The notes under the pieces were generated by a model that saw only the letters and a program-made list of their open reading frames with translations, was not told where the DNA came from and made no database searches. Below are positions 9,256 through 38,482 of a DNA stretch of 64,000 bases, one piece after another. Source of the stretch: Saccostrea echinata (taxonomy: Eukaryota); contig NW_026889779.1 in the NCBI RefSeq assembly GCF_033153115.1, positions 18,538,001 to 18,602,000 on the forward strand, written 5' to 3'. Every line of letters begins with the position of its first letter. The first letter of the stretch is position 1. The position numbers and the translations under genes are program-made.

Positions 9256-10816
9256 TTATCCAAACACTAAACCCGATAAGAAACCCCTTGGCTTTCTATC
9301 GGTTACTTTATCCATCAGCTTCCGGTTGGATTCGATCCAGCGCGAAATTAAACCCCTGGGTCTCTTACTTTCTTTTTTGTCTTTTTTCTTTTCAGGCTTC
9401 TTTTCTTGTACATTCCTACTTCTGCCTGGTGCTCTCCCACGTATAGTGCCTCGTCCACGTGAGGAAGATCTTCCTCGAGTATTTCCGCCAGTTAGTCTGC
9501 GTGTATTTCCCCCAGTTCGTCTGCGAGTATTTCCTCCAGTTGTTCTACGAATATTCAATCGATTTCGATTATTTACTCGATTAGGTCTCCTTATACTTGG
9601 CCTTCTTCTATTTGAGTTCTGTCTTCTCTCGTTAGCCAGACGTTTTTCCAGCTCCTTTATTCGTCTTTCCTGTTCTAGTCTTTCTTTCCTTAGTCTTTCC
9701 AGTTCCAACCTTCTTTTCTCTTCCTCAAAGGTTGCCGAGACCCATGGATCGACAGGACCGGGAAGCAATTCCCCGGGCCTCAAATGCCCCCTGTCTATCG
9801 TCACTAAACCATTTTCTCCATAGTACTTTGTGTCAGTGATTCCACGAGCTTGTTGGTCTCGAAGACGTCGCTGGACTTCGTCCATGGTTAACTGTACTTC
9901 ACGTGGTATTCCATCAGGGCCGACTTCCGTGAACCATTGCACTTCTTGACCGCCATATCCACTTTGGCGATGCACCTCCCGACCACCATGTCCATGCGTA
10001 TCATGAGCGCCATGTCCGTGCACATCTTGACCACCGTGTCCGTGCACATCTTGACCACCGTGGTTATGGTCATGTCCACCATGAACAACGAGAGCAGAAC
10101 AGAGAGTTCCTATTAAAAAAAATTTAAAATGTGTTTTAAAAGAAAATGATCGGGAAGCGTTTATATGAAGCCAGATTTGCATTAGTTTTTGTTCTACTTA
10201 AGAAGGAGGACAAAAATTTACAGATATTTACATCAATTCTGCAAGTATACAACCTCCTAAACGGATCAGCTTTCTTCCTGAGATTCATCTACGAATCAAG
10301 TTTCTCTGACATTGTGTAAAATATTTTTGGTTATTTGAAAATATTATTCGATGTATCAATCCTTCGTAGTTTACACGAATTTCTACCGACTTATCAGCCA
10401 ATAACTCTTTTCCCCCTTCTCAAACGATAATGTCTTAAATACCTAGTTCATGCATGAAAAGTATGCAAAATCAAGGTTTTCTTTTAAAAGAAAGCAATTT
10501 ATCCCCTCTATTTGATAAATGAATATATTTTAGATTCAAAGAAATATGAATGTACCCCATCCTCATAAACAATCGTTTAGTGTTCAAAAATTGAATTCTT
10601 TGCTTTCATTTCGGACAGCTGTTTTCTAAAATCCTGTTTTATGAAAAACTTCTCATTTCATTTTGCTATATTTAAGGTTATTGTTAAGCCTAAAAATTAA
10701 TCGGAATCCCTTAATGACGAAAACGAAAGACAAAAAAGAGTGAAATATTCAAGAAATTCATCACACTTACCTGAAAGGAAATAAACAAGTAATGAGAAAA
10801 ACATCGATGTGAACAT
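9256..10816 (-). CDS. Gene A: secreted His/Gly-rich then Arg-rich low-complexity protein, ~299 aa, orphan (2 coding exons)
   Basis: Exon 1 10816-10771 (46 nt, MFTSMFFSLLVYFLS+G, donor GTAAGT). Exon 2 10109-9256 after a ttttttttaatag acceptor. The phase-1 join gives signal peptide MFTSMFFSLLVYFLSGTLCSA. This is followed by HGGQDVHG repeats, a conserved core QWFTEVGPDGIPREVQLTM, a coiled coil, RRTTGGNT repeats and C-terminus GFLSGLVFG*. AATAAA at 8760-8755. Confidence 0.85.
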
Positions 10817-11002
10817 TGTCCTGAATTATTATAAATATTGAGATTTTCTGTCGTCTTGGCTTTATGACTTTTAATCCCCACAGGTGTGTACCGCCCTCTA
10901 AGACAGTCATCTATCTTCACGCAATCCATCAGCAGTAAGTACTGTTACCAATAAACAACACACATTCTTAATGCTGAAGTAACATAGGTTCTCAACTGCC
11001 TG

Positions 11003-11010
11003 TGACGTAA
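11003..11010. promoter_or_regulatory. CRE/ATF-like motif TGACGTAA upstream of gene A
   Basis: About 190 nt upstream of the ATG. Same motif at the same distance in paralog B. CCAAT (minus strand) at 11063-11067. Confidence 0.45.
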
Positions 11011-34948: not shown

Positions 34949-37908
34949 TTATTTTCCAAAGAACAGACTGCCTAAAGCAAATCCAATACCTAGGTTCTTC
35001 AACAAGTTATTGTTCTTTTTTGGAGGGGGTGGTGGGGGTCGGCGTGGAGGGGGTGGGGGAGGAGGTGGCTGGGGACGTTTTGTGGTTGGTGGGACTTTAA
35101 TAACTGGCGCGGGTGTAGCGGGCAAAATAAACGTGTCCGGAACTTTCGGTTTCACCGGCAGGACGTCCTTTGGATTTACTGGCGGATTAATGACACCTGG
35201 GTACGTAGATTCAATATCTTTAGGAACAACAAGCACGGGAGATGGCGTGGCAGAGGGAATGTATCCCGGAAGTGTTGGAATGACGTCATCCACTGGGAAA
35301 AAGTCACCTGGTTGTAAAGGTTTCTTACCGCCCGTAACAGGCGGTATTTTTTTCTCACCCGGCACCTTAATGACTGGGGACGGAGTGGCAGCTGGTATGT
35401 ATCCTGGAACCTCGGGTTCGGGTATGACGTCACCGACAGGAATGGCGTCACCAGGCTGTGGTCCTTGAGGACCTAGAGGGTTACCCGGTAAGATAGGTTC
35501 GGGCTCGGGTACAGGATTTCCAGAATTAACTCCAGGATCGTTCGGAAATACTAAGTTTGGAGAAGGTGTAGCAGATGGTATATAATCAGGTACAACGGGT
35601 ATAACGGGAATGACGTCACCAGGCTTCAGTCCGTTTTCGTTTACAGGCACCAGTTCACTTGGATGAACCTCATTCATGTGTTGTCTCAACAGTTCTCGCA
35701 GTCGTTGGTTCTGCTTCCTCAACCTTCTCATTCTCTTTCGCTCCCTCAACCACGCGGCGCGGTTCTCAGCTGGATTCCAATCTTTCTGGCTTTTGTCAGC
35801 GTTGAAGTCGATGGCGGGAAAAACAGCTGTCTCTCCTGTCACAGGGTCAAGTACAGATATAATGTCATGTGTGTCGTTACCGTGCAGTGTTGCGGGAAAG
35901 TCGTGAAAAGTTCCATCAGTGTGAAGATGACCCCGCCTGCGGTCCACAACGTCTCCTGGAGACACGCCAGTAACAGGCCTGGCATTAGAAAATTCCGGAA
36001 GTCCAGTTATTGGGTTTATTCTGTGGATACCATCCTCTGGATGAATGATTGGTCTATCGTTGATCTGACGCCCAGGACTTATCGCGTCTGATGGAAGAAC
36101 TTCCAACCCGACTAATTCTGACCCGTCTATAGGGCGAATGTCAATAGGGTTTGTAGGTCGATCTTCCAGGTTTACGTTGACGGGATCAACCGGATTTATA
36201 AAATCCGTCGGTCGATTATCTATTGGATTAACGGCTTCATTTACTTGCTTTACGTCGCTTGGGCTTATTGGTCCACTTATTTCTTCCTGTACGACAACAT
36301 TGTTTGGAACTTTATCTTTTACACTTCCAATATCCTTCTGTTGTTTTTCATTTGTATTTTTTATATTTTTGGGAACTTGAACATTATCATTGATTTTTTC
36401 TGTTTGGGTTTTTATTTCCTTTGTTGTGACGTCAGATGGCGGAATTGGAGACTCTTTCTTAACTGATTTTCTAGTATTGAATGCTCCTTCCAGTAAACTT
36501 TTACCAAAATTCAATATTTGTGATAAGCCATTCGAAGAGTCCCCGGGAGAATTCAAACTCTGGACTTGACTCAGAATTTGTTGTGGTGAAAGTCCAGGTC
36601 CTGTCTGGGAGGTACTGTTTAACAGAAGCGAGGCTATAGTGTCGATTCCGGAAGCTTGATTTGGTGCGGGGTTAATTACACTAACGCTATTTCGTCGCGC
36701 CATCTGCCGGGCGTTTTGGTCAAAGAAAGGTGGACGCGGCTGTCGCCATGGCTGTCCCCAGCTGTCGGGCTGCCTGGAGGGTGGGTTCCTAGAGGAGAAC
36801 CTCCGTGCAGTGAGGGGCTGCATTCTGTTAGATTCTGGGGAAGGAAACTGTCGACGAAATGACTGAGGTCCCCAAGGGTCTTGGAATCCTCCGGGAAAGG
36901 GTGCAAACTGTCCCGACACACCTAAAATACAGAAAAATAGAGAATATTATAAACGATTGAAACATATCTAAAACACAAAGGGTAAAAAACTATATTTCTC
37001 CATAGCGTAAAAAGCTATTTTTCTCCATAGCGTAAAAATACAAGATTTAAAAAGGAATTCAAAGTCATCAGCTCACAAAAACACAATTTCTGAAGAATAA
37101 AATCTTTTCTCCTCTATTTAATATTGATTTATTTATTCATTTATTATTTACTTATTCATTTATTTGAACTTTTATTGCATTATACTTTGTACATGTTAAT
37201 TTTCATACATCCGTTTTATCAACATGATCCAGTGGTGTTAAATTTTTAAAAACATGTTTTTATATTCCCGTGAAATAAGAATAAGGTTATAGATATGGAA
37301 CTCGTCAATATTTTCCCCTCTGCATTACGTCAATATTTGTTAGAAATGTATAGAACATTATAGAATAATGTAAACAGAGAAAGATACGCAGCTGAGTTTG
37401 GTGCGATATATACACTATGAATAAACAAATCGGATGGGATAAAACATACAATACTATAAACATTTTAAACGACTGGGTAACTAAAATTTACATATATTGT
37501 GCAAGAACAATTCTGAATTTTTTGCATTATCAAAACAAAAAAAAAATTTCATTGTTATAAAATTAAAGAAGTGTCCTTAAGGAGGCTGGGGGGTCAACAA
37601 ATTAACCATCAGATGTAACTTACCTGGTAATTTTTTAGATATGATATCTTAAGCTGTCAACTATCATTTGTCAAACAAAAATGTCATACATTTTAGTTTT
37701 AAAATTTGATCATTTTTGTATATTTTTATATGGAGCTCTTCTTCTAAAGGAGATCAATATAGTCTGAAAATGGCCACAACCACCAAGCCCTCTTAATAAC
37801 TCTATTCTGTATATTAAAAAAAGATTAGCACTTCTGTGAACGTATATTATTACCGTTAAGCATCATCTCAAGAATTACTAGAGACGCCATTACTGTTCGG
37901 AGAGCCAT
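34949..37908 (-). CDS. Gene D: secreted ~675-aa Pro-rich disordered protein, orphan (upstream leader exon ending at 38328)
   Basis: Coding exon 37908-37854 (55 nt, MALRTVMASLVILEMMLN+G, donor GTAATA). Large exon 36921-34949 (acceptor ttctgtattttag). Signal peptide ends ...LNGVSG/QFAP. Four P(S/A)ATP(S/A)P-type repeats, a poly-Pro run and C-terminus LGIGFALGSLFFGK*. An upstream exon ends ATG|GTAAGC at 38330-38328. Confidence 0.85.
37581..37792. mobile_element. Kolobok-type MITE in gene D intron
   Basis: TTAA on both sides (37577-80, 37793-96). Imperfect TIR GGAGGCTGGGGGG / GAGGGCTTGGTGG. Confidence 0.55.
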
Positions 37909-38482
37909 CTGTCCGCTGAAACAGAAAATCATAAGGACATTTTATATCAAATTGTATTTTACAAAGAATTCTAAGTACTTTCTGTATCGGTAAAATAAAA
38001 ATTAGCCAAAGGAATAAATTCAAACACGAAAACGAGAAAAAAATATAAAGGTATATGTCCCGAAAAAAAAAAAGATTTTGAAAAATGACCTTACGATGTT
38101 TGCAACACTTTTTTTTAGTAGAATACAAGAATTGGTCAATGATGAGAAGTCACTAATTTGAGAATAAACGGATCGAAAAAAATTTCTTCATTGATGCTTA
38201 AATTTATTGTTTAGAGTTATTTTATTGATTAACTTTTATATTTTAAAAAAATCATTGCAAAAATAGACGCATTTAATAAATATTGTAGTAGAATTATATT
38301 TGAAATGCATATAACGAACTGGCTTACCATGCTTTGATCATAGTTTATCCTTCAGTGAATGATACACAAATATCCTCGAAACATTAAATCCCAAATCTAC
38401 GAAAAGTCGTCCATCGTCTGCCAATATATGACCGAAGGACTCATGCGCGACATGACAGACGACATTTACGACTTGGTGGTGG

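What the first reader, a model, noticed from the sequence alone, without database searches (positions are those of the whole stretch)
9256..38400. Hidden cluster of four co-oriented orphan secreted disordered-protein genes with one shared gene architecture
Seen in sequence: four consecutive minus-strand genes, each with a 43-55 nt exon encoding most of a signal peptide, a phase-1 GT-AG intron and one large exon of low-complexity Arg/Pro/Gly/Asn-rich sequence with no recognisable domain. The ORF track hides the signal peptides. Established: molluscan shell-matrix and adhesive secretomes are dominated by lineage-specific, secreted repetitive low-complexity proteins. Inference: this is a tandem family or regulon (conceptually like the vertebrate SCPP cluster) for biomineral matrix, periostracum/ligament or cement. 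C and D may descend from the same ancestor as A/B but have diverged beyond alignment.
Basis: partly seen in the sequence, partly recalled or inferred. Interest (0 to 1): 0.85.

Follow-up and report, generated by a model that had tools for sequence, protein, structure and literature searches.

The report
Oyster-specific secreted disordered protein genes
Four neighbouring rock-oyster genes really do encode signal-peptide-bearing, mostly unstructured, positively charged proteins found only in true oysters, but they are three unrelated families (two already in RefSeq under misleading names) and nothing yet ties them to shell making.

Summary
Four minus-strand genes (A, B, C, D) each have a 43-55 nt signal-peptide exon, a phase-1 GT-AG intron and one large exon. 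Spliced RNA contigs from three runs in two studies use the A and B junctions exactly. RefSeq models of this same Saccostrea echinata chromosome use the C and D junctions. D has one more 5' exon. The N gap (34155-34295) lies 654 nt past D's stop codon, outside every exon and intron, so no frame question arises.

- **Family:** A and B are old tandem paralogs. C shows no detectable relation to A/B or D. D shares only a weak about 35-residue module with A-type proteins.
- **Orphan status:** all three families have orthologs across Ostreidae (Saccostrea, Ostrea, Magallana/Crassostrea), probably in conserved synteny. None has a Pfam, PDB or literature match.
- **Hidden:** C and D are already annotated. 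A and B are missing from the protein database for this species.
- **Shell, ligament or cement role:** no evidence was found.

A/B-family proteins always end in Gly. D orthologs end in KK, a hydrophobic tail and G-K/R. This is proprotein and amidation grammar, so I favour processed secretory proproteins. That reading is inferred.

The parts
9256..10109 (-). Gene A, large exon. Coding sequence runs to the stop codon at 9256-9258, and the 3'UTR continues below 9203 to at least about 9029. It encodes a His-rich tract, a conserved small module, a long charged helix, an Arg-rich tract and a C-terminal helix, and it ends in Gly.
10110..10770 (-). Gene A intron: 661 nt, phase 1, GT-AG.
   Evidence: Skipped in RNA contigs of X1, X2 and X3; sequence.
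10771..10961 (-). Gene A exon 1. The coding part is 10771-10816 (46 nt, signal-peptide h-region). The 5'UTR is seen up to 10961 in run X2.
11707..12563 (-). Gene B, large exon. The coding part is 11890-12563, and the 3'UTR runs to about 11707. B is a paralog of A with two Cys pairs in place of the His tract. It contains an 18-nt x3.9 repeat encoding RRPNRI.
12564..13263 (-). Gene B intron: 700 nt, phase 1, GT-AG.
   Evidence: Skipped in RNA contigs of X1, X2 and X3.
13264..13395 (-). Gene B exon 1. The coding part is 13264-13309 (46 nt). The 5'UTR is seen up to 13395.
22895..25101 (-). Gene C, large exon (734 codons plus stop). It corresponds to residues 16-749 of XP_061188355.1 (LOC133196484).
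25102..26557 (-). Gene C intron: 1456 nt, phase 1, GT-AG.
   Evidence: The RefSeq model carries the spliced N-terminus.
26558..26600 (-). Gene C signal-peptide exon, coding part (43 nt).
34155..34295 (.). Assembly gap (141 N). It lies downstream of D and is not part of any exon or intron described here.
34949..36921 (-). Gene D, large exon (656 codons plus stop). It corresponds to residues 27-682 of XP_061187993.1. It encodes a basic helix, (K/Q)PGD-x-IP repeats, a poly-Pro tract, and a C-terminus of KK, a hydrophobic tail and G-K.
36922..37853 (-). Gene D intron: 932 nt, phase 1, GT-AG.
37854..37915 (-). Gene D signal-peptide exon (62 nt).
37916..38327 (-). Gene D upstream intron (412 nt, GT-AG), implied by the RefSeq protein.
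38328..38341 (-). Gene D first exon, coding part (ATG at 38341, five codons, the last completed in the next exon). The extent of the 5'UTR is unknown.

Best explanation
RNA evidence exists for A and B only. Each product starts with a signal-peptide-like segment split by a phase-1 intron, and most of each protein is predicted to be disordered. Within the disorder sit short conserved islands. A-type proteins have a roughly 50-residue beta-hairpin/helix module, a long charged helix and a C-terminal helix. D has one long basic helix. Inferred: the proteins enter the secretory pathway. The signal peptide is probably cleaved after VHG (A, B), VSA (C) or VSG (D), which would leave N-terminal Gln in C and D. 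They are then probably processed as proproteins. Every A/B-family member has a basic site (K-R-P-R type), then a helix of about 30 residues, and ends in Gly. Every D ortholog has K-K, then a tail of about 20 hydrophobic, Gly-rich residues, then G-K or G-R and the stop codon. This is the usual grammar for convertase cleavage followed by C-terminal amidation. The final role, whether signalling, antimicrobial or matrix-binding polycation, is unknown.
For: - **Splicing:** for A and B; for C and D.
- **Coding constraint:** both haplotypes are intact, with pN/pS of 0.17 (A), 0.35 (C) and 0.26 (D).
- **Signal peptide:** hydrophobic N-termini with small residues at -3/-1 are conserved across genera in all three families.
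- **Disorder:** D has mean pLDDT 37, with only helix 409-444 modelled confidently. A has pLDDT 74-91 for residues 55-105 and about 91 for helix 121-167, and below 50 elsewhere.
- **C-termini:** Gly is invariant at the C-terminus in all 9 A/B-family sequences seen, although the preceding tail varies in length and sequence. All D orthologs end FGK or FGR after a conserved KK.
- **Restriction to oysters:** a profile search of 1.84 billion proteins found only 4 A/B-family proteins. Only two A/B copies are present in this genome, plus their haplotig twins. C and D are single copy.
- **Synteny:** the S. cucullata orthologs of B, C and D lie on one 520-kb contig. The O. edulis orthologs lie on one chromosome and have adjacent accession numbers.
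- **Expression:** A and B RNA contigs occur in 2025 S. echinata runs. According to PMC12564202, the only dataset besides the 2018 pooled one is from visceral ganglia and gonad.
Against: - No signal-peptide, GPI or cleavage-site predictor was available, so secretion and processing are read from sequence rules only.
- C has no terminal Gly.
- The many dibasic sites in A, B and C follow partly from Arg richness alone.
- Proteins of 680-750 residues with conserved islands throughout are unlike typical peptide precursors.
- None of the four is in the S. echinata neuropeptide list of PMC12564202.
- D's tail could equally be a GPI signal or a membrane anchor.
- The link between coded study P1 and the ganglion/gonad paper is an inference.
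- The alignments behind the structure models are shallow (6-7 sequences), so low pLDDT may overstate disorder.
Confidence: 0.45

Rival explanations
1. The four are structural matrix proteins of shell, periostracum, ligament or cement. The mantle or foot secretes them, and they act as disordered polycationic scaffolds for mineral or adhesive.
For: The proteins are secreted-type, low-complexity, basic, fast-evolving and lineage-restricted. Short in-frame tandem repeats show copy-number polymorphism: a 24-nt indel in A's His repeat appears in run X3. A-type proteins have a His-rich tract that could bind metal.
Against: No shell-proteome or mantle data support this view, and the gene and protein identifiers of the orthologs appear in no searchable paper. 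The typical matrix domains and Asp-rich, Gly/Tyr-rich or Cys-rich blocks are absent. The proteins carry conserved helices and short motifs rather than long repeats. The amidation-type ends are unexplained by this view. A and B were recovered from runs that are probably ganglion or gonad.
Confidence: 0.25
2. D, at least, is a cell-surface protein. After signal-peptide cleavage it stays attached through its conserved C-terminal hydrophobic segment, either as a GPI signal or as a short membrane anchor. The poly-Pro tract would act as a stalk. This reading can coexist with either view of A, B and C.
For: A segment of 12-14 hydrophobic residues lies at the very C-terminus, preceded by Asn/Lys and poly-Pro, and is invariant across four genera. 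The model shows a short helix there.
Against: The segment is short for a membrane helix. The basic residues lie on the side that would be extracellular. GPI signals are usually poorly conserved, whereas this one is nearly invariant. The KK ... G-K/R frame fits a released amidated peptide equally well. No GPI predictor was run.
Confidence: 0.3
3. The N-terminal hydrophobic segments are not functional signal peptides. On this view the proteins are intracellular basic proteins, nuclear or cytoskeletal, as the automatic RefSeq names suggest (ZC3H18-like, PPARGC-related protein 1-like).
For: The proteins have Arg-rich tracts, charged coiled-coil-like helices and poly-Pro. D's h-region carries a Glu in Saccostrea and Ostrea.
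Against: The hydrophobic N-terminus, with small residues at -3/-1 before a conserved mature start, is kept in all three families across genera. The RefSeq names rest on low-complexity similarity only, with no Pfam support.
Confidence: 0.07

Closest known systems
Drosophila salivary glue (Sgs) gene cluster
   Same: Both are clustered genes for secreted, largely disordered, fast-evolving proteins. Both have a phase-1 intron interrupting the signal peptide and repeat-number polymorphism (PMC6352337).
   Different: Sgs proteins are Thr/Pro/Ser-rich glycoproteins with long repeats and a known glue function, and several are demonstrably homologous. Here there are three families without detectable homology, the proteins have basic Arg-rich tails, and the function is unknown.
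Vertebrate SCPP (secretory calcium-binding phosphoprotein) cluster
   Same: Both are tandem, co-oriented genes for secreted disordered proteins.
   Different: SCPP genes descend from one ancestor and have many small exons with phase-0 introns, and their products are acidic phosphoproteins (my own knowledge of the family). Here the genes have 2-3 exons, a phase-1 intron and basic products, and no common ancestry was detected.
Molluscan shell-matrix low-complexity proteins
   Same: Both are lineage-specific and have a signal peptide, low complexity and often a basic pI.
   Different: Members of that group are defined by recovery from shell and by mantle expression. Neither is shown here.
Peptide and antimicrobial-peptide proproteins with a C-terminal amidated product
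   Same: A/B-family proteins and D have a signal peptide, a basic cleavage site, a terminal peptide and then Gly or Gly-Lys/Arg before the stop codon. C and D have N-terminal Gln after the predicted cleavage site.
   Different: These precursors are very long and carry conserved islands, and each would release only one candidate peptide. No peptide evidence exists. The proteins are absent from the S. echinata neuropeptide set. C lacks this C-terminal grammar.

Membership tests
One tandem gene family (A, B, C and D homologous) | Detectable sequence or profile similarity among all members | tested here: not met
   A and B are clear paralogs (shared motif, helix and tail; three coding blocks at 77-82% DNA identity). 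A/B against C and C against D score no better than reversed-sequence controls. A/B against D has probability 26% and E 7e-4 over 34 columns.
One tandem gene family (A, B, C and D homologous) | A shared intron position and phase that is specific to the family | tested here: inconclusive
   All four have a phase-1 intron inside the signal peptide. However, this is over-represented in secreted-protein genes generally (PMC1626468).
Vertebrate SCPP-type cluster | Phase-0 introns throughout, with many small exons | tested here: not met
   The intron is phase 1 and each gene has 2-3 exons.
Molluscan shell matrix, ligament or cement proteins | Protein recovered from the shell, ligament or cement proteome | not testable with these tools
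   No proteome data could be searched. The identifiers of the orthologs appear in no paper text. The supplements of four shell-proteome papers are either not held or give no hit.
Molluscan shell matrix, ligament or cement proteins | Mantle-enriched or larval shell-field expression | not testable with these tools
   Run identities are coded. The runs that hold A and B are a pooled library and, probably, ganglion or gonad libraries.
Secreted proteins (classical pathway) | N-terminal signal peptide with n-, h- and c-regions and small residues at -3/-1 | tested here: met
   Tested by rule-based reading only. The best 9-residue Kyte-Doolittle hydropathy within the first 38 residues is 1.7-3.7, and the cleavage-type motifs VHG, VS[AS] and V[SE][AG] are conserved in orthologs. 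SignalP was not available.
Amidated peptide proproteins | C-terminal Gly (or Gly followed by basic residues) directly before the stop codon, preceded upstream by a basic cleavage site | tested here: met
   Met for the A/B family (9 of 9 sequences end in Gly; K-R-P-R-type site upstream) and for D (all orthologs have KK, a tail, and FGK or FGR). Not met for C.
Amidated peptide proproteins | The mature amidated peptide detected, or expression in neuroendocrine or secretory cells | not testable with these tools
   No peptidomics were available. None of the four is among the neuropeptide precursors listed for S. echinata.
Intrinsically disordered proteins | Low predicted order over most of the length | tested here: met
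   In D, 623 of 682 residues have pLDDT below 50. In A, 120 of 283 residues are below 50, and a small confident module and helices are present. C was not modelled. Its composition is 72% disorder-promoting residues. The alignments are shallow, which is a caveat.

The most novel reading that the evidence does not exclude
The D, C and A/B block may be an oyster-specific, syntenically conserved set of previously unrecognised secretory proproteins. On this reading, A-type proteins and D share an ancestral module (an RRLR helix followed by L-[RK]-P-G-[DE]-x-[IL]-P). Both would release C-terminal amidated peptides, an amphipathic helix of about 30 residues from A/B and a Gly-rich hydrophobic peptide of about 20 residues from D. 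These peptides would act in neuroendocrine or reproductive signalling or in host defence.
Probability: 0.15. Interest if true: 0.6.

Novelty: new member of a known kind. Interest (0 to 1): 0.35.

Why it matters
Bivalve genomes are full of lineage-restricted secreted genes whose roles are guessed from composition alone. This locus shows how such a guess can overreach. The gene models are right, but the "family" is really three unrelated families, and the shell-matrix label has no support.

Three things are useful in practice:
- A and B appear to be missing from the protein set of this species and can be added, with RNA support.
- The RefSeq names of D and of the S. cucullata B ortholog are artefacts of low-complexity similarity.
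- The conserved Gly-terminated ends and the motif shared by A-type proteins and D give concrete hypotheses that mass spectrometry can test.

If amidated products were found, oysters would gain new peptide families, which bears on work on spawning and immunity in aquaculture.

Tried and rejected
- **Pfam:** nothing above noise on the four large exons.
- **PDB sequence search:** profiles of all three families found nothing.
- **Fold search with the A model:** Foldseek gave no match at E <= 0.001. VIA-align matched only generic coiled coils to helix 118-175, at Z about 5.
- **ESM Atlas:** no usable hits for A or for D residues 310-450.
- **Profile search of 1.84 billion proteins with the A/B family:** only 4 proteins.
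- **LASGLVamide lead:** A's tail resembles LASGLV, but the precursor listed in PMC12564202 is an unrelated multi-copy precursor, and no A/B motif occurs in that paper's supplements. Rejected.
- **Differential-expression tables:** the RefSeq names of these genes do not occur in that paper's supplements.
- **Literature:** searches by LOC, XP and UniProt identifiers of all orthologs found no papers. Shell-proteome supplements are not held or give no hit.
- **A further 3' splice in A:** the loose end at 9203 is simply collinear sequence beyond the stretch I laid. Rejected.
- **Joined models:** the spliced exon-1-plus-exon-2 models were not assembled or searched. Searches used exon 2 by reference, or database proteins.
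- The look-up of sequencing runs and read laying allow one call each. I used both on A and B, so C and D have no direct read evidence here.

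
Full report
**What is there**

ORF listing shows four large minus-strand ORFs at 9256-10182, 11890-12570, 22895-25051 and 34949-36919. Reading the minus strand upstream of each one, together with a script, shows a short ATG-initiated hydrophobic exon in each case. The coding parts are 46, 46, 43 and 55 nt. Each exon ends one base into a codon, is followed by GTAAGT (GTAATA in D), and is separated from the large ORF by an intron of 661, 700, 1456 or 932 nt that ends in AG. 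The reading frame continues into the large ORF. The ORF track does hide the signal peptides, because its ORFs begin at in-intron start codons.

**The gap**

The only N run is 34155-34295. It lies 654 nt downstream of D's stop codon and about 7.5 kb upstream of C's ATG. No exon, intron or reading frame crosses it. It can affect only D's 3' flank and the estimated C-D distance. I did not read or fill it from any other copy.

**Are the junctions used?**

One run search and one read-laying run were allowed, and I spent both on A and B (9200-13400).
- Contigs of three runs from two studies (X1 and X3 from 2025, X2 from 2018) cover the exons only.
- They skip exactly 661 nt (10109/10771) and 700 nt (12563/13264), with CT..AC ends on the + strand, which is GT..AG on the minus strand.
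- A's transcript continues collinearly past 9203.

For C and D, the window's exon 2 is 100% and 655/656 identical to XP_061188355.1 (LOC133196484) and XP_061187993.1. Both are encoded on a 36.2-Mb contig of Saccostrea echinata, and their N-termini are the predicted spliced ones. These are annotation models, not reads. D's model adds a 5' exon (ATG at 38341, donor GTAAGC after 38328, acceptor before 37915), so D has three exons.

I searched exon by exon by reference and did not assemble or search the joined spliced models.

**Which organism, and how many copies**

The window is G000:C30:18538001-18602000. The A/B family has only these two members, and C and D are single copy. Each also has a 98%-identical twin in the same order on a 2.18-Mb contig, which is probably a haplotig.

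Between the two copies all ORFs are intact. pN/pS is 0.17 for A, 0.35 for C and 0.26 for D. B differs at 3 synonymous and 5 non-synonymous codons. The counts are small but fit purifying selection.

DNA similarity between A and B is confined to three coding blocks at 77-82% identity. A B-type ortholog is present in S. cucullata. The duplication is therefore old.

**Relatives**

- **A/B:** the first search found four proteins at about 40% identity. A profile search of 1.84 billion proteins added only one fragment. Cluster look-ups identify an Ostrea edulis ortholog (LOC125659523) and spliced transcript-derived forms from another oyster. All have a signal-peptide-like start and a His-rich tract. 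No S. echinata protein was returned for A or B, so both appear to be absent from that species' protein set.
- **C and D:** orthologs are present in S. cucullata, O. edulis and Magallana gigas. D also has orthologs in M. angulata and Crassostrea virginica.
- **Synteny:** the S. cucullata orthologs of B, C and D lie on one 520-kb contig. The O. edulis orthologs lie on one chromosome with adjacent accession numbers.
- **Other databases:** there were no Pfam, PDB or Atlas matches.
- **Literature:** no paper mentions any of the identifiers.

**One family?**

No.
- With the first alignments, hhalign gives probabilities of 0.1% (A/B against C), 0.3% (C against D) and 8.8% (A/B against D).
- With more orthologs, A/B against D reaches probability 26%, E 7e-4 and score 35.6 over 34 columns. 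Reversed-sequence controls score 20-25. The other two pairs stay at control level.
- The A/B-D match is an RRLR-type helix followed about 20 residues later by L-[RK]-P-G-[DE]-x-[IL]-P. That motif occurs in every A-type protein (1-2 copies) and every D ortholog (2-3 copies), but not in B-type proteins or in C.

This is a lead, not proof of common descent.

The shared phase-1 intron in the signal peptide does not settle the question. Such introns are over-represented at signal-peptide cleavage sites in animals (PMC1626468). The same feature has been used as supporting evidence for common origin in the Drosophila glue genes (PMC6352337).

**Protein anatomy**

- **Charge:** pI is 11.4 (A), 10.7 (B), 10.8 (C) and 8.8 (D). 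A, B and C have acidic or neutral N-terminal parts and strongly basic Arg-rich C-terminal parts.
- **Repeats:** short in-frame tandem repeats encode A's HGHGGQDV and TGGNTRR units and B's RRPNRI unit. Run X3 carries a 24-nt deletion in A's His repeat.
- **D structure:** AlphaFold2 gives mean pLDDT 37, with only helix 409-444 and the poly-Pro region modelled with any confidence.
- **A structure:** AlphaFold2 gives a confident small module of beta-hairpin, helix and two short strands at residues 55-105 (pLDDT 74-91), a 47-residue charged helix, and a C-terminal helix. The rest is below 50. 'No recognisable domain' is therefore true for databases, but A-type proteins have a small, conserved, probably folded unit. 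Fold searches matched only generic coiled coils.

**How it probably works**

The hydrophobic N-termini, with small residues at -3/-1, are conserved in orthologs of all three families. D's is the weakest.

Two conserved end features stand out.
- All nine A/B-family sequences end in Gly, although the preceding residues differ in sequence and length. A K-R-P-R-type site lies about 30 residues upstream.
- All D orthologs end with K-K, a near-invariant Gly-rich hydrophobic stretch of about 20 residues, and then G-K or G-R.

By established knowledge of prohormone processing (proprotein convertases, carboxypeptidase, peptidylglycine amidating monooxygenase), this is the grammar of a released, C-terminally amidated peptide. 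C and D would begin with Gln after signal-peptide cleavage.

I therefore favour secretory proproteins, with confidence 0.45. All processing steps are inferred. C lacks the Gly end. D's tail could instead be a GPI signal or a membrane anchor.

**Expression**

The 2018 study has two organisms, of which one holds the locus and one does not. This matches the pooled embryo, larva and adult libraries of 'Saccostrea lineage J' and S. glomerata (PMC6201952).

PMC12564202 states that this was the only earlier S. echinata RNA dataset and that its own 2025 data come from visceral ganglia and gonads. The 2025 runs that hold spliced A and B are thus probably ganglion or gonad. Because run identities are coded, this remains an inference. 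It neither shows nor excludes mantle expression.

**Shell-matrix claim**

I found nothing for it beyond composition. I could not test it properly, because shell-proteome supplements were not held or gave no hit.

**Verdict**

The locus is a new member of a known kind: lineage-restricted genes for secreted disordered proteins. Its specific points of interest are the A and B genes missing from the protein set, a small conserved module, a motif shared between A-type proteins and D, and amidation-type ends.

Noticed in passing
window 9970-10059 (indel at 10013): Run X3 carries a 24-nt in-frame deletion in A's His-rich 24-nt repeat. This is an expressed copy-number polymorphism of the HGHGGQDV unit.
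   Followed up: partly
window 1704-3063 (+): Two adjacent plus-strand ORFs look like a B-box zinc finger followed by an NHL-like beta-propeller region. This is probably a TRIM-type gene downstream of A.
   Followed up: no
window 27356-28363 (+), 18200-18493 (+), 29435-29695 (+), 19084-19374 (-): The B-C and C-D spacers contain degenerate retroelement fragments: a reverse-transcriptase YIDD-type motif and recurring 'YLD...LTTKLY' and 'FRKFYGRYNDLV' peptides. A 90-nt tandem duplication lies at 28148-28318. No other intact gene was seen between the four.
   Followed up: partly
window 21173-21395: A 35-nt minisatellite with 6.4 copies at 96% identity lies in the B-C spacer.
   Followed up: no
window 11410-11447: A roughly 34-nt segment between A and B is present in many unrelated RNA contigs at very high depth (up to about 1270). 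It is probably part of a dispersed transcribed repeat.
   Followed up: no
window 38483-38490: A perfect TGACGTCA palindrome (CRE-like) lies about 145 nt upstream of D's first-exon ATG. A single 8-mer like this is expected by chance about once per window.
   Followed up: no
G000:C59:1106881-1133608: A second copy of the whole A-B-C-D block, at 98% protein identity and in the same order, lies on a 2.18-Mb contig and is probably an unpurged haplotig. RefSeq annotated C and D there as separate loci (LOC133174732 and XP_061165873.1).
   Followed up: partly
window 30364-30749: A degenerate 13/26-nt CAACATCAGACAG-type microsatellite array lies in the C-D spacer.
   Followed up: no
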